A stretch of 63,048 nucleotides of DNA, filler included, from Octopus bimaculoides (Eukaryota): the NCBI RefSeq assembly GCF_001194135.2. It is 6 parts of 6 records of this genome, joined end to end, with 100 filler letters (N's around TTAATTAATTAA, not from the genome) between each part and the next. Parts side by side here need not be neighbours in the genome. Positions count along the whole stretch, not along the records: positions 36,841 to 49,008 come from NC_068996.1; 5 more parts are not named here. One strand, written 5' to 3'. Below, piece by piece: positions 2,290 through 48,969 of the stretch. Position 1 is the stretch's first letter, and every line of letters starts with the position of its first letter. The notes under the pieces are model-generated. The model worked only from the letters and a program-made list of their open reading frames with translations, was not told where the DNA came from and searched no databases. The position numbers and the translations under genes are program-made.

Positions 2290-3691
2290 AACAACGAACA
2301 AGATGAGGACACATATCCGTCCAATGTAAATAATACGCATGTCGTTAATATGTATTATGTTTTATATGTGTATTAAGATGTATATACTTATATGCATTCG
2401 TGCCAGCGACCAGATATAAATGTATTTTTTACGTATATATGTCTTCACTTACACTTTCTACTATGTACGTATGTTCGATCGTTTTTCTCTTATAGTATCT
2501 TTATTATTATTAATCTTACTCTTTCTACTTTTTGCCTCTCTCTTTCTAGCAACTACTCATCCACTTTCACACCCAGCACCTGTAATATTTGAGTAATCTT
2601 CCAATCCATAAAATACGTTATAAAAGGCATTTTAACGTTGAATTAACCTCTCTCATCCCCTCCCCTTATATATCCTACATCATTTATATTTCTATCTTAT
2701 CCCACTTTTTTTCTTCTTTCACTTCTATTTCTTACTTTTTTCTTCTACGCATATGTTTATCGTGTCTTTCGTTTTCTTTTATCTGTAGCGTTATTTATTA
2801 TCTAATTTCTCATCTCTAGTTCTTATTGTAATTTCAAGTTTTGTATATATCATCTTCAATCTTATTATTCCTTTTAATTATTTGCACTTCCTATTTCCGG
2901 ATATATTTTTATTCCTTTTACGCACAGATTGTTATTTATTTATTTATTATTGTTTCTTCGAATGTTAACGTTTACCCCCATCAGGCATCCAACCAACACC
3001 GTTATTTCTTTCAAATCAGACACTCAGTCAAATTCAATTGCCCATTCATTGAAATGAACTGCTCACATTGTATTATAGTATTCAATATGCACCTATACAA
3101 TTTGGTCACGTGAAACTCCGAGTAACAAAATTAAGTCCAGTTGGAATATGTCTGAGATGAATTTGAACTGGAAAGTTTTTTTTTTTTATGTGGTTTGTCG
3201 GGGTTTAAGACAATACCGTGCTATACACATTAATCATCTGGAATGATGGGTGGAATTCGATCTCGTTTTTTCTCTCCAGTACGAGATACAAAGAGAGGCA
3301 ACTCTGCTAGGACTAAGAAGCAAGTCTTCCTTTATAGTACATCAGTAAATATCAGCCAGCAACTACATGCCGAGGCCGTACAAAATGCAGAGTAGATGCT
3401 CGAGGCAGTGAAAGAAAGTATACGAACGAAAGTGAAGTTAAAATATGTTCCAGAGTTATTTGCTTAAAAAAGAATCTTGCATGAGATTAGATCTGTATTA
3501 GATCTGTATCAGATCCGTCTCTCTTGACCTGATGGACTCGTGTGCCGTCTTCTAAACTATATATCAAGGGAAGTAACTCCACAGGATAAACCGCTCAGAA
3601 ATGTCTTTACAGGTTCAGATGACATACACAAACACATGCAAACAAACATGTGCAGACACACATGCAAACATCCATCCGTCCATACATACAT

Positions 3692-3729
3692 CCTGTCTGT
3701 CGAAGAGCGTAGGCTCGAAACGTAATGGA
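3692..3729 (+). ncRNA. Hammerhead-like motif, family B (core variant CUGUCGA), in a pseudo-LTR-like repeat (~3690-3830)
   Basis: CTGTCGA-A-GAGC(gtag)GCTC-GAAA-CGTA. Weak stem I. Homologous inverted copy at 10906-11070. Confidence 0.55.
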
Positions 3730-40385: not shown

Positions 40386-42895
40386 TAACCTTGCCCAAAC
40401 CAGTTCTTTTATGATGTCATTAGTTACGTCTATCAATAAATAATGATTTTTCTATATCTTGTAACTTTTCAAAGCAAATACATTCAAATTACATTCAATG
40501 ATATAACTACAGATTAGGGCAATCAACACACACAGTTTTTCTTTTTAGTGCTCTCTCTCAGTACTTCTCCAGTTTCCACTAATTTGCTATTATTGCAGTA
40601 CAGTATAATGGTACTAGTAGTTGCAAGTTCTGGTGTGCTCTATGTTAGAGAGAAAGACCCTGGATTTTAGACATGTCGGCTCTCAGCACTCGAAAATTTT
40701 ACTCTTATACTTGGAGCTGCAAACGGTTGTATTTAAGAAATTTTATTTCGTAGGGTCTCCTGTTTCCGTCCATGTAGCATAAACGGTTTGCTTTCCATTC
40801 TCCCTCTACAATAAAATGCTGCTCCAATAGAGTTCCTTCTTTCTTTTGAAGGTCATGATGATTTTTGCAATTAGTTTATTCTCACGCCCACGCCGACTAC
40901 ATGTTATTTTATCTCCTTTTCACACTCACTAGATACCGTATCTTGCTTAACTCATTCATTGCTATACCATTGTGGGAGCAGTTATATAGAGTACCCACTC
41001 CAGCTGGTCTCGTTTCGTCATCCGCGTTAAGCGCTAGGCTCACGTTTTATACACTCAATGATGTATTGTTCCAAGTGTTCTTTTCCAAAACCATTCAAGT
41101 CTTCACGTGTTTTCCAAGACTAAGCCAGTTTACGCACCGCTCCTTCCATTTTCTAGATGTAAAGAAGGCACTATCCTGATCTCAATATTCATGGAGCCGA
41201 TCTTTATCCAACGATGCCTGACTGGTCAAGTTAGAAAAGTAGTTAAATTTATTTTGTTATCATCACTGCCAACGTACAAATACCTGTCTTGTGAAATATT
41301 CATATTATTTTTGCAGATGTTCCTTTTAAAATTAGTAGGTTTTGAGAGACGGGAGTAGATTTTGCTATGAGCGTTTTGGAAACAATTTATTCTTCTCAGA
41401 GATATTTTTTTCAAAATTGTCTAAATGTTTAAAAAGAAAAATTCAAAATGTAATGTCAATTATCTCCCGTCTACAGACACAAACTCAAGAGAAAATCCTC
41501 ACCAGTAAAGGGCCTATACCTGGACTACACACACGCGCGCGCACGCACTTACATACACGCATGCACACATACACGCACGCGCACATACATACACACACAA
41601 ACACACATACACACAAACTCAGGTGGACACATAACCCACTCACAGAGGCAAACATAAACAAACCTCCAATTTGGAAATAATTAAATCCAATAATTTTTTC
41701 CAGAAGCAACTCACACAGAAAAGCACTTATAATAATAACAATGATGCATTTTTTTCTATTGGCTACAAGGGCCAAAGACATGGTAGAAAATATCCTCCTA
41801 CTTAGTAAAGCATACTCAGAGTAGATGTATTCAGTCTCATCAGTGTTGTCACTCACGCCCACCTTTACATAAACACGCTTCCCCCTCTACTCTCAACTTC
41901 CTCTAATGATTTCAAATTTTGGCAGAAGGCCATCAATTTCGAGGGATGGCATAAGTCGTTACTCCAGTGCTCAACAGGTGCCACTTTATCAACTCCAAAA
42001 AGATGAAAGTCTTTTAGTTTTTGTTTACTTATACATATCAGCAAATGAGCCAATTGAACAACTCTCTGTGGTTGTTTAACTTGCTAGAAATAACAGCCAA
42101 ATCTTCCTCGTACTATGCTCTTGTTATTATTAAGGAAAGGAAAAAAATAGAATTAATATTTTTGATTTTATTCGGCTCTATGAATTAAAATTTTTTTAAT
42201 GCTTTCATTCATTACTTGATACAAGAAAAAAGGAATTGGAAAAATCCTGACCAAAACAGAGAAATTGTCACATAACAAAACTATAGAAAGAAAAAGAAAA
42301 GGTTGCATTCGAAAACCAAGAGATGTTTTTTTAACTGAGGTGTAATTTTATAATTAAAACAAATTCAAAATTCAAATTTCGGAACATAAGACTTAACATG
42401 CTGTCTGGTGTATGGCCGAATTCAAATAAGTAGAAGACCTAAAATAAATGTGTGTGTGTGTATGAGTGACTGTGGTTGAGCCTTTAATAGACAGGGGTCA
42501 ATTTCAGTTCAGTCGTAGAAAGGAATTCAAGTACCTATCGGCCACTCCCTCTCACTCACTCACTCACTCACTCACTCACTCACTAACTCACTCACTCACT
42601 CACTCACTCACTCACTCACTCGCTCACTCTCTCTCTCTTTCTTTCTCACTTTCTCGCTCGATACACGTAAACTTTAACTATCTTAATTTTCCTATTAAGG
42701 TTGTTGCTTCTTCGGTGGCCCAGTAGGCATGGGTGTTGAGAAGTAGTGATACAACACATAGGTAGTGGTTTCTTCCAGAAATTACAAGCTATCTAGTTAA
42801 AAGTTTTATTTAAGCAACAGAATTTCATTCAACAGTTTCTTTCTCGTAAGCCTGACACACGTCAAAAAAAAAAAAAAAAAAAAAAAAATTGGCGT

Positions 42896-42948
<53 letters not shown>

Positions 42949-43276: not shown

Positions 43277-43317
43277 TAATAATAATAATAATAATAATAA
43301 TGATAATAGTAATAAAA

Positions 43318-43357
<40 letters not shown>

Positions 43358-43358
<1 letters not shown>

Positions 43359-44127
43359 CCCAGCAATGGCTGAGAAGCTCAGGACTCAAAGCAGAGACTG
43401 AAGGATTTTTAATTGCTGCACAAGACCAAAGCCTCCCCACCAGAAATTACCAAAAACACATAATGAAAAGAAATATAACAAGTAACTGTAGAATATGTGG
43501 AGATCGACAAGAAACAATAAATCATATTATCTCTGGCTGCCCAGTCCTGGCTAAGAAGGAATATATCCACAGACACGACAGAGCTGGGACCTATATACAC
43601 TGGAAGCTATGCCAACATTATGGAATAACAACAGAAAAAAGATGGTATAAACACACGCCAGAAAAGGTCACAGAAAACGAGAAAGCAACCATACTCTGGG
43701 ATATGCCAATACACACAGATAGAGAAATTAAGGCAAATNNNNNNNNNNNNNNNNNNNNNNNNNNNNNNNNNNNNNNNNNNNNNNNNNNNNNNNNNNNNNN
43801 NNNNNNNNNNNNNNNNNNNNNNNNNNNNNNNNNNNNNNNNNNNNNNNNNNNNNNNNNNNNNNNNNNNNNNNNNNNNNNNNNNNNNNNNNNNNNNNNNNNN
43901 NNTATAATAAAAAAATATTCAGACAAATACATAACAAAAATAGCAGGACTTACAAATATATATAACATACAGAAAATTGCACTACTGGGTACTGCACACA
44001 TCCTACGCAAAACACTTTCAATACAGTAAACATAAGAGCACCACAGCAAACCACAGCACATACCCAAGGTGCACAGAGCTGCGCTCGGTAGTGAAGTGAA
44101 AGCACGTTATAAAAATAAAACTACTGA
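43358..44127 (+). mobile_element. R4/Dong-like LINE 3' portion (family ii): zinc knuckle plus REL endonuclease, open apart from the gap
   Basis: SQQWLRSSGLKAETEGFLIAAQDQSLPTRNY...CRICGDRQETINHIISGCPVLAKKEYIHRHDRAG...ILWDMPIHTDREIKAN[gap]...IQKIALLGTAHILRKTL*. Stop at 44029, short UTR, TAA tail. Confidence 0.92.
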
Positions 44128-44184
44128 ATAATAATAATAATAATAATAATAGTCACAGTAATAATGATGATGTTGATGATGATA

Positions 44185-44215
<31 letters not shown>

Positions 44216-45290
44216 TGATGATGATGATGATGATGACGACAAGAACAACAGCAACAACAACAACAACAATTATAATTATTATTATAAAACAGAAGGGAGC
44301 TGCTAGAAATGACTAGAAAAGTAGATTCTGTTATCAGTGGGATAAATACTAGAATATTGGAAGCACTAACATAGTGATCTATGCAGGAGGAGTAGTAGTC
44401 ACTACTAGATTAGATATGTCACAGGGAACAATTTGATAAAAGGAAATGTGGAAAGAGAGACTACAAAATAAAGTAAAGACTTTAAGACAAGATCTGAGTA
44501 GAATAGAAGCCTGGAAAACAAACAAACAAGTTACGAAACACAAGATGCAAATCTTCCCTTGAGGAAAGACACTTAGTCAATGAGAAAGGATTTGGGACAG
44601 TAATAGAAGAGTTGAAACAGCATATCATAGCAGTAGCAGGGAAACTCTCCAGATATCAGAACAGAATAGATCAGTATCAACAGAATAGATTATATGAGGA
44701 AATGTTATAAGCAAATAAAATAGTAGACAACAAAGTACTGAAGATGAGAAATCTAATGCAGAAGAAGCTAGAAAGTTCTGGATAAACCAGTCATTCGTAA
44801 TGGAGATGCGTTATGGTTAAAAAAAGTGAAGGAAGAAGTTGTGAGTGAGAAGCAGCCAGATCCAAAACCAACTAGTGCATTGATGAGTAAAGTGTTAGGA
44901 AACATGCCGAAATGGAAGGGCCCACGAACATATTTAGTTCAAGGGTACTGGCTAAAGAAATTTAATAGTTTGCATGGGAGGCTGAAGGAACAGCATCAGG
45001 ATTGCCTTAATGGAGAAATAATAAGAGATTAGATGAGAAGAGGGGTAGCAATATACGTCATGTGAGATAAGAGCAAGTGTAATACAGCTACCAACTATAG
45101 ACCAATCATTAATCTGAGAACTCTCAACAGGGGTGCTGCAGAAAAGCATTTATGAGCACCTTGACAACCAGAAATTTACTGTCATAAGAACAAAAAGCTA
45201 GAGGAATGCATGATCTAGTATACATAGACAAAGTACATTATTTACATTATTTACATTTGACGGATATTCGTCCTCATCTTGTTTGTTGTT

Positions 45291-45336
45291 AACACAACGT
45301 TTCGGCTGATATACCCTCCAGCCTTCGTCAGGTGTC
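45291..45336 (-). ncRNA. Minimal type I hammerhead ribozyme, family A (left arm)
   Basis: Exact reverse complement of 45552-45597. Confidence 0.85.
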
Positions 45337-45434
45337 TTGGGGAAATTTCGAACCTGGGTTCTCATTCCTATCGATGTTACTATTATTATTATTATTATTA
45401 TATTATTATTATTACTATTATTAATATTATTAAT

Positions 45435-45503
45435 CAGGTCGCTGCCGTGAATCGAACTCGGAACCTTGGGGTTAGTAGCCCGCGCTCTTAACCACTACAC
45501 CAT
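45435..45503 (-). promoter_or_regulatory. tRNA-derived internal Pol III promoter (SINE head)
   Basis: Minus strand ATGGTGTAGTGGTTAAGAGCGCGGGCTACTAACCCCAAGGTTCCGAGTTCGATTCACGGCAGCGACCTG. A box TGGTGTAGTGG, B box GAGTTCGATTC, anticodon-like arm GGG-CTACTAA-CCC. Confidence 0.8.
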
Positions 45504-45551
45504 AATAGTAACATCGATAGGAATGAGAACCCAGGTTCGAAATTTCCCCAA

Positions 45552-45597
45552 GACACCTGACGAAGGCTGGAGGGTATATCAGCCGAAACGTTGTGTT
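45552..45597 (+). ncRNA. Minimal type I hammerhead ribozyme, family A (right arm)
   Basis: Stem I GACAC/GTGTT, core CTGACGA plus an extra A, stem II GGCTGG/TCAGCC, GAAA, palindromic AACGTT stem III with no loop. Predicted cleavage after GUU at 45592. Confidence 0.85.
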
Positions 45598-46857
45598 AAC
45601 AACAAACAAGATGAGGACGAATATCCGTCAAATGTAACTAATGTAAATAATGTAAATAATTCCTCATCTCTTAAATATAGAACTGTAATAGACAAAGTAG
45701 TTCTAAATGGAGTAAAAGCTAGAAAGAAAAATCTAACAATAGCGTGGATAGATTATAGGAAAGCCTATGACATGATCTCACACTCATGGATAAGTGAATG
45801 CTAGAGTATATTCAGACAACATAAGAGAATTAATTAACTGTAGCATGAAAAAATGGAAAGTAGATCTCTACTTCGGTGACACAGTCTTACGGAAAGTCAA
45901 TATCAAAAGAGAATATTTCCAGGGGCACTCGTTGTCCCCTCTAATATTTATCTTATGTTTGATCTCCCTCAGTTTAGTATTAAGGAAGGTAAAGGATATC
46001 AGGTCAGAAAAATTAACCATTTGCTCAACATGGATGATCTGAAACTTTTAGTAAAAATGAAAAAAAGATAAATTACTTAATACAGACTGTAAGACTCTTC
46101 AGCAAAGTTATAGACAAAGAATTTGGCATAGATAAGTGTGCACTATTAGTCATGAGAAGGGGATAGGTAGTCAACAGTGAAGGTATCCAATTACCAGATG
46201 GCCAGACATTAAAATCATTGAAAGAAGGAGAGAATTATAAGTATCTAGGAGTGTTAGAATCTGACAGAGTACTAACTACAGAAATGAAAACAGAAATTGA
46301 GAAGGAGTACATCAGAACGATGAGGAAGTTAATGAAGTCAAAGCTAAATGGTCCGAATATAGTGAGGGCTGTAAATACTTGGGCAAGATACCCAGCAGCT
46401 TTTGTACATTGGACAAAAACTGAATTAGCAAAGCTAGACAGAAGAACTAGGAAGGAATTCAATATGAATGGAGGACTCCGCTCAATGGCAGGAGCAGCAA
46501 GATTAGAGTTACATAGAAAAGAAGGCGGAAGAGGGTTAAATTACAGACTATGGAAAAGGCAGGTAAAATCCTCAAAGTTATAGGTGCATTGGGAACTATC
46601 CTGAAAGATCGGAATAGCAGGATAAAAGAAATAGGCATAAACTCAGTTTAGTACAGCTCCAGAAAACAGTGTTATTAGGGACAGCTAGGATACTTAGAAG
46701 GTTCTTGGCATCTAAGGTTACTTGTTGTAGCCCGATGTTAGTATATTTTTCTTTTCAAACTATCTAATCTGTTGTGTGTATATGATATTAATAATAACAA
46801 TAACAACAACAACGACGACAACGGCAAGAACAAGAACAACAACAATATTAATAATCC

Positions 46858-48253: not shown

Positions 48254-48328
<75 letters not shown>

Positions 48329-48329
<1 letters not shown>

Positions 48330-48560
48330 GTGAGAGAGCGGTTCATGCCATCAAAATGACACTGGGGTAAAATATACGAAGCCCATTATACCCATCATGA
48401 CTACCCGTCTGATAAGGGTACACCAGGCACATGCATCACAACCATATGTGCGTGACATGGTGATCTCATATCAAGATAAACAGCGCATGACCTCGTAGGT
48501 GGGGCCCAGTTAGAATTTTCTTCAGTTCGAATAGCCCATCCCGTTCAAAAGACACCTGTA
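48329..48560 (-). mobile_element. 3' end of a TAA-tailed retroelement abutting the (TAT)n array at 48258-48328
   Basis: Minus strand ends GATGGCATGAACCGCTCTCTCACT followed by (TAA)n. Probably a LINE 3' UTR; family not determined. Confidence 0.45.
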
Positions 48561-48969
48561 CAAGTGTCGTTTTAGGAATTTGAACGAAATACCCATGTTT
48601 CCAAAAAAAATTCTCTCAACACATGGCTTCAATGCTCCCCTACTACTTTTGCGCATGATCGAGAGGCACATATTGTCAGCCACCAAAGGACATGCTCAAC
48701 TGGTCAAGGTCAAACAACCGGCAAGCAAATTTGGTTTTGAGCAGAATATTTGCTGTAGCCCATCTTTTATACTAAGACAAAACAATATACATGATAACAC
48801 TTCCAGTCAGTTAAGATGAGAAGTCATGAAAGCGATTGAATAAATATGAATATTGACCTTTGAAATTTGTTTCTCTCTTTCTTAATTTTATATTCCTGAA
48901 GCTCTATTAGAGAGCTGATTATTTGTGCTGTATAAAGTGGATAACTATACTGTTTAATTATTCTTTATG

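What the first reader, a model, noticed from the sequence alone, without database searches (positions are those of the whole stretch)
45224..45699. tRNA-headed SINE carrying a hammerhead ribozyme and inserted with Penelope-type architecture
SEEN: a 452-bp insertion in a decayed LINE RT, bounded by a 12-bp TSD (ATAGACAAAGTA). On the minus strand it reads: tRNA-like head with A and B boxes (45503-45435), an (AAT)n-rich linker, then a ~150-bp body containing a complete minimal type I hammerhead and ending in (AATGTAAAT)n. A second copy of the body sits upstream of the head in inverted orientation (45502-45652, one mismatch seen, joined by short microhomology) and extends 35 nt further at its 3' end, so both flanks are 3' ends of the body. 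KNOWN: minimal hammerheads with palindromic stem III mark the pseudo-LTRs of Penelope-like elements, and PLE insertions often carry an inverted, 5'-truncated pseudo-LTR upstream. SINEs normally borrow LINE 3' tails. Schistosoma Sm-alpha repeats are a precedent for a tRNA-like promoter combined with a hammerhead. INFERENCE: this is a Pol III-driven non-autonomous retroposon mobilised by a PLE reverse transcriptase and GIY-YIG endonuclease instead of a LINE, with the ribozyme defining an RNA end. Near-identical arms and an intact TSD imply recent activity. I do not know of a description in cephalopods but cannot check that.
Basis: partly seen in the sequence, partly recalled or inferred. Interest (0 to 1): 0.92.

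Follow-up and report, generated by a model that had tools for sequence, protein, structure and literature searches.

The report
Octopus SINE carrying a Penelope-type hammerhead
A young 452-bp insertion in an octopus genome is a short non-coding retroposon with a tRNA-like promoter head and a 3' module (minimal hammerhead ribozyme plus two alternative 3' ends) that looks borrowed from Penelope-like retrotransposons, suggesting a SINE that parasitises a Penelope-like element instead of a LINE.

Summary
A 452-bp insert (45236-45687) lies between perfect 12-bp duplications inside a decayed reverse-transcriptase gene. It has a head with A and B boxes, an (AAT)n linker and a ~150-nt body. An inverted, 5'-truncated second body differs by one base in 153 and runs 35 nt further. 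The body carries a minimal type I hammerhead with every feature published for Penelope-like-element (PLE) ribozymes. None occurred in 2000 random 12-kb sequences. The inverted truncated partner and the 35-nt "tail" at one end only are the published PLE insertion signature.

Head and body are linked in a second octopus copy. Homologous bodies behind different A/B-box heads occur in a cuttlefish locus and in an animal contig mis-binned in a bacterial MAG. These show the same inverted pairs and the same two discrete 3' ends.

Three things are not shown. No autonomous PLE sharing the module was found. Rfam and default ARAGORN do not recognise the head as a tRNA. Covariation is weak.

One sub-claim fails: both copies read through the ribozyme cut site, so it defined no RNA end here.

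Verdict: probably a PLE-dependent SINE family of coleoid cephalopods, a new variant of known kinds.

The parts
45224..45235 (.). Left copy of the 12-bp target-site duplication ATAGACAAAGTA
   Evidence: D3, 100% identical. reconstructs the empty site.
45236..45379 (-). Body of the full-length copy (sense on the minus strand). It ends at the proximal 3' end ...AATGTAAATAATG, with no tail.
   Evidence: It aligns with the cuttlefish and L010 bodies.
45291..45336 (-). Minimal type I hammerhead of the full-length copy; predicted cut between 45296 and 45295
   Evidence: Descriptor scan, (CUGACGA starts at 45331).
45380..45434 (-). (AAT)n-rich linker between head and body
   Evidence: TRF 45377-45432. 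The last 7 nt (ATAATAG) are also present at the inner end of the inverted copy. The template of the inverted copy therefore also carried the linker.
45435..45503 (-). tRNA-like head: A box 45502->45492, B box 45459->45449. The layout corresponds to tRNA positions 8-73; the 5' acceptor strand is absent.
   Evidence: only A/B-box match in the piece; 0.016 expected. (ARAGORN finds it only at a relaxed threshold). (no Rfam or default ARAGORN hit).
45502..45652 (+). Inverted, 5'-truncated second copy (7 nt of linker plus the whole body), sense on the + strand
   Evidence: I1, 153 nt at 99%. (one mismatch, at 45638).
45552..45597 (+). Minimal type I hammerhead of the inverted copy. Helix I 5' strand GACAC 45552-56; CUGACGA 45557-63; bulged A 45564; helix II 45565-70 with 45579-84; GAA 45585-87; ACGU 45588-91; U17 45592; cut 45592/45593; helix I 3' strand GUGUU 45593-97.
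   Evidence: Published features. Conservation across sources.
45653..45687 (+). 35-nt 3' extension ('tail') present at this end only. It contains TCCTCATCT, complementary to AGATGAGGA at 45609-45617.
   Evidence: The tail is conserved in cuttlefish copies (CCTCATCTCAGAAATATAGAC), so it is templated sequence and not flank.
45688..45699 (.). Right copy of the target-site duplication
   Evidence: D3.
44900..46600 (+). Host: decayed LINE-type reverse-transcriptase gene interrupted by the insert. It is context, not part of the element.
   Evidence: RVT_1, E 4e-12, spanning the insertion site.

Best explanation
This is one copy of a non-autonomous retroposon (a SINE) of an octopus.

Its 5' head is a tRNA-like sequence with A and B boxes. 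These would recruit RNA polymerase III and give a transcript of head, (AAT)n linker and body.

Its 3' body is the kind of module found at the pLTR/ORF junction of Penelope-like elements. It has a minimal type I hammerhead. About 60 and 95 nt downstream of the ribozyme cut lie two alternative sites where reverse transcription starts.

The proposed insertion mechanism is as follows:
1. A PLE reverse transcriptase/GIY-YIG endonuclease nicked both DNA strands 12 bp apart in an old LINE.
2. Each 3'-OH primed cDNA synthesis on a SINE RNA.
3. One cDNA started at the proximal site (no tail) and ran to the head.
4. The other started at the distal site (with the 35-nt tail) and stopped in the linker.
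5. The two cDNAs were joined at a short AT microhomology.

This gives two bodies with their 3' ends outward, a tail on one side and a 12-bp duplication.

The hammerhead was not cut in either template. It is more likely kept as part of the RNA that the PLE protein recognises, or for processing multimeric or read-through RNAs, than as the maker of this element's ends.

What is shown: the anatomy, the motif, the linkage and the conservation. What is inferred: Pol III transcription, the PLE partner, the order of events and the ribozyme's role.
For: **Single insertion event.** A perfect 12-bp duplication flanks the insert, and the host RT frame is restored on excision.

**Hammerhead.**
- The min-HHR is found only in the two arms and in none of 2000 random 12-kb sequences.
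[quoted passage not shown] It also matches their description of the motifs: a short helix I and no helix III loop.
- The core is conserved in relatives while the free position N7 varies (C, U, A). The bulged nucleotide is present in all nine aligned copies (A in eight, G in one).

**PLE insertion signature.**
- Craig et al. 2021 describe an inverted 5'-truncated copy at the 5' end and a 30-40-bp tail, often at one end only.
- Frangieh et al. 2024 show a PLE protein that nicks and extends both strands. It starts reverse transcription at two internal sites that bound the tail, and it does not need hammerhead cleavage.
- Here the extension is 35 nt and sits on one side only.
- The same arrangement recurs at cuttlefish L005 38420-38940 and 41100-41385. 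It also recurs at L010 3387-3692, where the outer end of the second arm is interrupted by another copy.

**Two discrete 3' ends across sources.** The proximal end lies 9-14 nt before CCTCATCT. The distal end lies after ..ATATAGAC...

**The inverted arm came from a SINE RNA.** It includes 7 nt of the linker.

**Head-body linkage.**
- O. bimaculoides A0A0L8FR24 ends in an exonised antisense copy with body, I-run linker and head in the same order.
- In the octopus piece the only A/B-box match lies directly upstream of the hammerhead body on the same strand. The same is true of the only match in L005 and of one of two matches in L010.

**Compatibility with Pol III.** No TTTT run occurs on the sense strand inside any of three full-length copies.

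**Active PLEs exist in octopus.** O. vulgaris has 30 recently active Penelope families, and 893 'unclassified SINE' families.
Against: - No autonomous PLE with this 3' module was found in any sequence I could reach. There is no RT or GIY-YIG ORF in L005, L010 or L002-L004.
- A translation of the body found no PLE protein among 5.8 billion proteins.
- Rfam hammerhead and tRNA models and default ARAGORN score nothing, in any species.
- Covariation in helices I and II is not distinguishable from shuffles with nine sequences. Only the inner 3 bp of helix I are kept in the decapodiform copies.
- Only two octopus copies were seen, one of them only as protein.
- The ribozyme has no partner in tandem here. 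Min-HHRs cleave poorly in vitro, so activity is doubtful.
- The proximal end falls in a 9-mer repeat that could be read as a LINE-style microsatellite tail.
Confidence: 0.72

Rival explanations
1. It is an ordinary LINE-dependent tRNA-SINE. The body would be a LINE-derived 3' tail ending in an (AATGTAAAT)n microsatellite of the CR1 or Dong type. The inverted partner would come from twin priming or template switching during LINE target-primed reverse transcription. The hammerhead-like motif would be incidental.
For: - The proximal 3' end lies in a 9-mer repeat.
- (TAA)n and (AAT)n tails are common around this locus.
- CR1, Dong-R4 and RTE are the most active LINEs in O. vulgaris.
- No PLE partner was found.
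Against: - The sequence beyond the 9-mer repeat (the tail) is conserved between octopus and cuttlefish. The repeat is therefore internal and not a terminal microsatellite.
- Classic twin priming inverts a more 5' part of the same RNA. Here both arms carry the 3' end.
- Inverted pairs recur at 4 of about 8 loci.
- The hammerhead has all the PLE-specific features and is conserved.
- The two LINE fragments in the piece share nothing with the body.
Confidence: 0.12
2. It is a chance or secondary composite. An inverted pair of PLE or retrozyme fragments inserted first. A separate tRNA-SINE with an (AAT)n tail later landed at its centre.
For: - (AAT)n looks like a retroposon tail.
- Head plus linker could be a complete small SINE.
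- The octopus and cuttlefish elements have different heads and connecting segments.
Against: - There is no duplication around head plus linker.
- The inverted arm itself begins with 7 nt of the linker, so its template already had linker joined to body.
- A second octopus copy has body, linker and head in the same order.
- A/B-box heads sit upstream of the body in two other sources.
Confidence: 0.06
3. It is a DNA transposon or foldback/MITE with 150-bp terminal inverted repeats and a long duplication (for example Mutator-like), or an assembly artefact of a short-read scaffold.
For: - The arms are long and nearly perfect inverted repeats, and the flanking repeat is 12 bp.
- The scaffold has an N gap nearby.
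Against: - The repeats are not terminal on one side, because of the 35-nt extra tail.
- One arm continues into a head that the other lacks.
- Single, non-inverted copies exist: L005 16040-16224 and L010 1366-1745.
- Excision restores an RT reading frame exactly, which an assembly error would not do.
Confidence: 0.04

Closest known systems
[quoted passage not shown] 2017)
   Same: It shares the CUGANGA and GAAA boxes, an unpaired nucleotide between A9 and G10.1, and the G10.1-C11.1 pair. It also has no helix III loop, a palindromic ACGU, and a short helix I of 3-5 bp. Many such motifs are reported dispersed in non-coding DNA.
   Different: Here the motif sits behind a tRNA-like Pol III head in a roughly 270-nt non-coding unit. 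It is not in the repeat of an RT/EN-coding element. Helix II is 5-6 bp rather than 7-8 bp.
PLE insertion architecture (Craig et al. 2021, PMC8557442; Frangieh et al. 2024, PMC11167929)
   Same: There is an inverted 5'-truncated copy next to the 5' end and a 30-40-bp tail at one end only. Both target strands are used as primers. There are two RT start sites downstream of the hammerhead, at distances similar to those in PAc. Hammerhead cleavage is not needed for insertion.
   Different: The template is a short non-coding RNA with its own promoter. No tandem pseudo-LTR is present. The partner protein is unknown.
Schistosoma Sm-alpha / Sj-alpha SINE-like retroposons (Ferbeyre et al. 1998; Laha et al. 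2000; reviewed in PMC6765202)
   Same: A Pol III promoter is combined with a type I hammerhead in a short non-autonomous retroposon.
   Different: Sm-alpha carries a canonical hammerhead with loop-loop contacts that is active in vitro. It occurs largely in tandem arrays. The octopus element has the PLE-type minimal variant, is dispersed, and shows PLE-type ends. There is no sequence similarity.
Metazoan non-LTR retrozymes (Cervera & de la Pena 2020, PMC7229834; Li, Clavereau & Pollet 2026 preprint, 10.64898/2026.07.22.740005)
   Same: They are non-coding hammerhead-bearing elements proposed to be non-autonomous derivatives of PLEs, with long duplications when present.
   Different: Retrozymes are defined as tandem repeats of 150-450 bp that give circular RNAs and have no small-RNA head. 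This element is a monomer with a Pol III head and no tandem copy.
Conventional tRNA-derived SINEs of cephalopods (OK/OR1/OR2 of octopus, Ohshima & Okada 1994; Ceph-SINEs, Akasaki et al. 2010; Kojima 2018, PMC5786205)
   Same: It has a tRNA-like head, an unrelated body, a 3' module presumably recognised by a partner's RT, and high copy number in coleoids.
   Different: The Ceph domain is CORE plus RTE 5'UTR and is unrelated to this body. Those SINEs are assigned to LINE partners. I could not compare sequences with OK, OR1 or OR2 because they are not in the tools. Identity with one of them is therefore not excluded.

Membership tests
Hammerhead ribozyme, PLE-type minimal type I | Conserved catalytic boxes C3-U4-G5-A6-N7-G8-A9 and G12-A13-A14, with a cleavable H17 | tested here: met
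   CUGACGA is at 45557-63, GAA at 45585-87 and U17 at 45592. The boxes are kept in most relatives while N7 varies.
Hammerhead ribozyme, PLE-type minimal type I | [quoted passage not shown] | tested here: met
   The bulged A is at 45564, and G45565 pairs with C45584. A bulged nucleotide is present in all nine aligned copies (A in eight, G in one). Pair 10.1-11.1 is GC or GU in all nine.
Hammerhead ribozyme, PLE-type minimal type I | No helix III loop; palindromic 15.2-16.2, so that two copies can form helix III in trans | tested here: met
   The sequence is GAA-ACGU-U (45585-45592). AACGUU is a 6-nt palindrome. The same sequence occurs in intact cuttlefish and L010 copies. Decayed copies differ at CpG sites.
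Hammerhead ribozyme, PLE-type minimal type I | Helices I and II supported by compensatory changes | tested here: inconclusive
   In the proposed register 75% of cells pair, against 16-45% when slid. One pair switches U-A to C-G. The covariation score is not above shuffles with nine sequences (156/500). With six sequences it looked better (10/500).
Hammerhead ribozyme, PLE-type minimal type I | Match to curated hammerhead covariance models (Rfam RF00163 and relatives) | tested here: not met
   There is no hit at E<=10 on 521 nt, nor in the relatives. My reading, not tested: the lack of a helix III hairpin in this minimal variant may explain the miss, so the miss is weak evidence against.
Hammerhead ribozyme, PLE-type minimal type I | Self-cleavage at the predicted site | not testable with these tools
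   This needs in vitro transcription of monomer and dimer. Published min-HHRs cleave weakly and only as dimers or with protein.
tRNA-derived SINE | Internal Pol III promoter: A and B boxes at tRNA spacing at the 5' end | tested here: met
   It is the only match in the piece, with 0.016 expected. Equivalent heads lie upstream of the homologous body in L005 and L010.
tRNA-derived SINE | Recognisable similarity to a tRNA (cloverleaf or sequence) | tested here: inconclusive
   Rfam tRNA and default ARAGORN find nothing. A tRNA-Ser(ACT)-like fold appears only at a relaxed threshold that is unspecific. The arm lengths fit tRNA positions 8-73 by eye.
tRNA-derived SINE | A repeated family in which head and body travel together | tested here: met
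   A second octopus copy is seen through P0001. There are at least 6 related copies in 45 kb of cuttlefish and 4 in 3.9 kb of L010. Copy number in octopus was not measured.
tRNA-derived SINE | 3' region shared with an autonomous partner retrotransposon | not testable with these tools
   No octopus genome or repeat library was searchable. No partner ORF occurs in any fetched locus.
PLE-mobilised (non-autonomous PLE-type) element | Inverted 5'-truncated copy abutting the 5' end of the main copy | tested here: met
   45502-45687 lies against 45236-45503. The arrangement recurs at L005 38420-38940, L005 41100-41385 and L010 3387-3692.
PLE-mobilised (non-autonomous PLE-type) element | Optional 30-40-bp tail, typically at one end of the unit, reflecting two RT start sites | tested here: met
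   A 35-nt extension occurs at one end only. The tail sequence is conserved in cuttlefish. There is one tailed and one tail-less arm in the octopus insert and in both cuttlefish pairs; the outer end of the second arm of the L010 pair is interrupted.
PLE-mobilised (non-autonomous PLE-type) element | Sequence identity of the 3' module with a PLE encoding RT and GIY-YIG endonuclease in the same genome | not tested
Metazoan non-LTR retrozyme | Head-to-tail tandem repeats, each with a type I hammerhead | tested here: not met
   No tandem copy occurs in the window or at the related loci.
MITE / foldback DNA transposon | Inverted repeats that reach both termini symmetrically | tested here: not met
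   The right arm is followed by 35 extra nt before the duplication and the left arm is not. Single non-inverted copies exist.

The most novel reading that the evidence does not exclude
Coleoid cephalopods carry an old, abundant superfamily of true SINEs. In these, Pol III tRNA-like heads of different origin share a conserved 3' module: the hammerhead plus the reverse-transcription-initiation unit of a Penelope-like element. This would be the first SINE-PLE partnership, parallel to SINE-LINE partnerships. It might account for part of the large 'unclassified SINE' fraction of octopus genomes. The conserved module would mark the minimal RNA that a PLE reverse transcriptase needs.
Probability: 0.45. 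Interest if true: 0.75.

Novelty: new variant of a known kind. Interest (0 to 1): 0.62.

Why it matters
- **A new kind of partnership.** SINEs are defined by borrowing the 3' end of a LINE. A SINE that borrows from a Penelope-like element would extend that rule to the third class of eukaryotic retrotransposons.
- **Origin of dispersed hammerheads.** It would show that dispersed minimal hammerheads in animal genomes are not all truncated PLEs.
- **A natural minimal substrate.** A roughly 150-nt module is conserved between octopus and cuttlefish. It offers a minimal substrate for studying how PLE proteins choose their two internal start sites, and what the ribozyme is for.
- **Genome annotation.** Octopus genomes are about 12% SINE, mostly unclassified. 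Assigning a partner would improve annotation and dating of cephalopod repeats.

Tried and rejected
- **Curated RNA models.** Rfam on the 12-kb piece and on 521 nt, and ARAGORN at default, gave no tRNA and no hammerhead. The hits listed were microsatellite 'miRNAs', which I discarded.
- **Relaxed ARAGORN.** It finds the head but also 20 'tRNAs' in 45 kb, so it carries little weight.
- **Other copies in the piece.** BLASTN and nhmmer found only (AAT)n runs.
- **Six-frame translation trick.** Searching 5.8 billion proteins for copies gave one useful hit, P0001. Its DNA is not on record.
- **Octopus DNA through the host LINE's C-terminus.** This returned only short ENA contigs and three long contigs of other organisms without copies.
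- **Exact-pattern scan of metagenomes.** It found three contigs that share only the hammerhead core (L002-L004). They are not the same element and have no PLE ORF.
- **Viral contigs.** Nothing was found.
- **PLE ORFs in L005 and L010.** None were found.
- **Covariation.** It looked suggestive with six sequences but not with nine.
- **Folding energy of the body.** It is not unusual: z = -0.9 and +0.15.
- **Ceph-SINE domain.** I considered it and rejected it as unrelated.
- **Literature.** No paper in the library links hammerheads with octopus, or SINEs with a PLE partner. One search failed on syntax, and Lunse et al. 2017 is not held.
Full report
**1. What is in the sequence**

The finding is accurate at its coordinates.
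- ATAGACAAAGTA occurs at 45224-45235 and 45688-45699.
- Between the two copies lie 452 bp.
- Two arms, 45234-45386 and 45502-45654, are reverse complements over 153 nt with a single mismatch, 45250 A against 45638 C.
- Read on the minus strand the insert has four parts in order:
  - an inverted body (45687->45502);
  - a head (45503->45435);
  - an (AAT)n-rich linker (45434->45380);
  - a body (45379->45236).
- The inverted arm runs 35 nt beyond the point where the sense arm meets the duplication (45653-45687).
- Its inner end includes the last 7 nt of the linker (ATAATAG). The RNA it was copied from therefore already had linker joined to body.
- Deleting the insert and one duplication copy gives ..DLVYIDKVVLNGVKARKKNLTIAWIDYRKAYD... 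This is a continuous stretch inside a Pfam RVT_1 match (E 4e-12), in a gene that is otherwise broken by stops and frameshifts.
- This is therefore one clean insertion into a dead LINE. No other copy is present in the 12-kb piece.

**2. The hammerhead**

On the + strand the motif reads as follows:
- GACAC (45552-56);
- CUGACGA (45557-63);
- A (45564);
- GGCUGG-AGGGUAUA-UCAGCC (45565-84);
- GAA (45585-87);
- ACGU (45588-91);
- U (45592), then the predicted cut;
- GUGUU (45593-97).

A descriptor asking for the two boxes, helix II, a palindromic 15.2/16.2 pair, H17 and helix I finds only the two arms in the piece. It found nothing in 2000 random 12-kb sequences of the same dinucleotide make-up.

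The descriptor was written after seeing the motif. The stronger argument is therefore agreement with published traits. Cervera and de la Pena list features of PLE minimal hammerheads that were not in their own search pattern. [quoted passage not shown] They also describe a short helix I of 4-5 bp and absence of helix III. All are present here.

Rfam's hammerhead models give no hit even at E<=10. My reading, which I did not test, is that the missing helix III hairpin may explain this. I therefore count the miss as weak evidence against.

**3. The head**

- TGGTGTAGTGG and GAGTTCGATTC, 45 nt apart start to start, are the only A/B-box pair in the piece. About 0.016 are expected by chance.
- By eye the arm lengths fit tRNA positions 8-73, and the 5' acceptor strand is missing.
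- Rfam's tRNA model and default ARAGORN do not call it.
- ARAGORN calls a tRNA-Ser(ACT)-like fold only at a threshold that gives 20 calls in 45 kb of cuttlefish DNA.
- 'tRNA-like Pol III head' is therefore a fair description. 'tRNA-derived' is not proven.

**4. Related sequences**

*A second octopus copy.* A six-frame translation of the element found one protein, Octopus bimaculoides A0A0L8FR24.
- This is a NUP42 gene model whose last 49 residues are an antisense copy of the element.
- It reads PSSGVLGKFRTWVLIP (body, across the hammerhead 5' half), then an isoleucine run (the linker), then QVTAWNRTRNLGVSS (head).
- It is an independent, diverged copy with the same order of parts, and it places the window in an octopus.

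*Cuttlefish.* The cuttlefish orthologue of that gene gave 45 kb of Acanthosepion pharaonis DNA (L005).
- BLASTN and a profile built from the alignment found at least six relatives of the body there, at about 74% identity over about 100 nt.
- The alignment shows a conserved module: GGTTCGAAAT, the hammerhead, AAGATGAGGA, AATGTAAATAAT, CCTCATCTC, AAATATAGAC.
- The last part of that module is the octopus 'tail'. The tail is therefore templated element sequence and not flank.
- L005 38420-38745 (minus strand) is a full-length copy. It has an A/B-box head, the only such match in the 45 kb, and no tail.
- Abutting that head is an inverted 5'-truncated copy (38750-38935) that has the tail. The pair is flanked by AAGCATTTTT / AAACATTTTT.
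- L005 41100-41385 is another inverted pair, with a tail on one side only.

*A third source.* A pattern scan of prokaryotic genomes found a 32% G+C contig binned in a Rubritalea MAG (L010). It is evidently animal DNA.
- It holds a full-length copy with an A/B-box head (1366-1745, no tail).
- It also holds an inverted pair (3387-3582 with tail, 3600-3692) and a fourth copy.
- One of these carries an intact GCAC-CUGAAGA-A-GGCCGG..UCGGCC-GAAAC-GUU|GUG.

*Summary across sources.*
- The heads and connecting segments differ. The 3' module is shared.
- The 3' ends fall at two places. One lies 9-14 nt before CCTCATCT. The other lies after ATATAGAC (octopus, cuttlefish) or about 45 nt after CCTCATCT (L010).

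**5. Conservation of the ribozyme**

In nine aligned copies:
- the boxes are kept in most copies;
- the only free core position, N7, is C, U or A;
- a bulged nucleotide is present in all nine (A in eight, G in one);
- pair 10.1-11.1 is GC or GU in every copy; C to U at the CpG formed with G12 would give the GU pairs, which is my reading.

Helix II pairs 4 and 5 change U-A to C-G and G-C to G-U. In the proposed register 75% of cells pair, against 16-45% when the partner is slid.

The covariation score is not above column shuffles with nine sequences (156/500). With six sequences it had looked better (10/500). Covariation is therefore compatible with the fold but not demonstrative. Only the inner three pairs of helix I are kept outside octopus.

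**6. How it most likely works**

The anatomy matches what is published for PLEs and for no other retroelement class that I know of.
- Craig et al. describe an inverted 5'-truncated copy next to the 5' end and a 30-40-bp tail, often at one end only.
- Frangieh et al. purified an Anolis PLE protein and showed four things:
  - it nicks and extends both strands;
  - it starts reverse transcription at two internal RNA sites that bound the tail;
  - these sites lie roughly 85-90 nt downstream of the hammerhead cut;
  - hammerhead mutants insert normally.
- In the octopus element the two ends lie 60 and 95 nt downstream of the predicted cut.

I therefore infer the following sequence of events:
1. A PLE enzyme nicked the + strand after ..AAAGTA and the minus strand after ..TGTCTAT, 12 bp apart.
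2. Each 3'-OH primed cDNA synthesis on a SINE RNA.
3. One cDNA started at the proximal site and reached the head.
4. The other started at the distal site and stopped in the linker.
5. The two cDNAs were joined at an AT microhomology.

Pol III transcription of the unit is plausible. The boxes are present, and no TTTT occurs on the sense strand inside any of three full-length copies, with the first run just downstream of each. It remains untested.

The ribozyme did not make any end of this insert. Both arms run through the cut site. Its retention fits better with a role in the RNA fold bound by the PLE protein, or in processing multimers or read-through RNA.

A 9-bp stem, AGAUGAGGA (45609-17) with UCCUCAUCU (45661-69), brackets the proximal start site. 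It is invariant in octopus and 8 bp in cuttlefish. It is predicted in the minimum-energy fold but carries no covariation.

**7. Rivals**

- *LINE-dependent SINE with twin priming.* It does not explain the conserved sequence beyond the 9-mer repeat, arms that both carry the 3' end, or the recurrence of inverted pairs.
- *Nested insertion.* It is contradicted by the missing inner duplication, by the linker remnant on the inverted arm and by the second octopus copy.
- *MITE or assembly artefact.* It is contradicted by the asymmetric ends, by single copies elsewhere and by the exact restoration of the host frame.

**8. What is missing**

- I found no autonomous PLE with this module.
- Active Penelope families do exist in octopus. 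O. vulgaris has 30 recently active families. There, SINEs make up 11.6% of the genome, and 893 recently active SINE families are 'unclassified'.
- I could not compare the element with the OK, OR1 and OR2 SINEs of Ohshima and Okada.

**9. Comparison and novelty**

The parts are known:
- PLE minimal hammerheads;
- the PLE insertion signature;
- tRNA-like SINE heads;
- the schistosome Sm-alpha precedent for a Pol III promoter plus a hammerhead;

The combination was not found in the searchable literature. That combination is a dispersed SINE with its own Pol III head whose conserved 3' module is the PLE hammerhead and initiation unit, shared by octopus and decapodiform cephalopods.

I rate it a new variant of known kinds and of good interest to transposon and ribozyme specialists. 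The key partner test is still open.

Noticed in passing
L003 298-690 (minus strand); L002 1489-1522 and 1695-1750: Two JGI metagenome contigs, probably host DNA of some animal, carry CCUGACGA-A-GGCUG..CAGCC-GAAAC-GUGUAGC hammerhead-like cores. The helix II stem is identical to the octopus one. In L003 an A/B-box head with the same odd CUACUAA 'anticodon loop' (ARAGORN tRNA-Ser(ACT) at relaxed threshold) lies about 285 nt upstream on the same strand. This could be a similar head-plus-hammerhead element outside cephalopods, or coincidence.
   Followed up: partly
L010 (contig CBDHDV010000339.1, labelled MAG: Rubritalea sp.): The contig is 32% G+C. It is full of SINE copies and a roughly 120-bp satellite (about 1750-2760). 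It looks like animal (cephalopod-like) DNA mis-binned into a bacterial MAG.
   Followed up: partly
L010 3600-3700: One body copy (+ strand) stops exactly at the predicted hammerhead cut (..GAAACGTT|). It is abutted there by the tail end of another copy on the opposite strand. This is either an insertion into a pre-existing copy at that spot or a copy made from a cleaved RNA. The rest of the contig was not available.
   Followed up: no
window 45530-45545 and 45343-45358; L005 38527-38537 and 38788-38798: The 5' part of the body contains GGTTCGAAAT, a good B-box-like motif. It is conserved between octopus and cuttlefish. Its meaning is unknown; it could be the remnant of another tRNA-like unit or a PLE promoter element.
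   Followed up: no
window 45525-45687 (+); L005 38420-38600 (minus strand); L010 3387-3677 (minus strand): One sense reading frame stays open through the whole body and tail. It gives similar peptides in octopus (..FPKTPDEGWRVYQPKRCVNNKQDEDE..), cuttlefish and L010 (..PEFEKAPEEGRSSHRPKRCEYNNKDEEN..). In the Anolis PLE the equivalent region is the start of the ORF. No protein match was found.
   Followed up: partly
P0001 (O. bimaculoides A0A0L8FR24), residues 146-194: The NUP42 gene model ends in an exonised antisense copy of this SINE. The splice acceptor lies inside helix II of the hammerhead. It is likely a truncated or alternative terminal exon, or an annotation artefact.
   Followed up: partly
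window 48256-48580 (minus strand); 42864-42948; 43277-43358: Other retroposon-like sequences end in long (TAA)n/(AAT)n runs, one of them preceded by A25. Such tails seem common in this genome. The SINE's linker may be the relic of such a tail, from a fusion of a small tRNA-SINE with the PLE module.
   Followed up: no
window 43463-43738, 43739-43902, 44100-44290: A second LINE fragment (the C-terminal zf-RVT part of an ORF2) is followed by a 164-N assembly gap and a compound (AAT)n/(ATG)n/(AAC)n microsatellite. It lies just upstream of the RT fragment that hosts the insert.
   Followed up: partly
L005 41150-41354: The two arms of this cuttlefish pair meet with only 1 nt between them, forming a near-perfect foldback. 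They are 77% complementary and seem to belong to different subfamilies. One arm resembles the octopus hammerhead type and the other the cuttlefish type.
   Followed up: no
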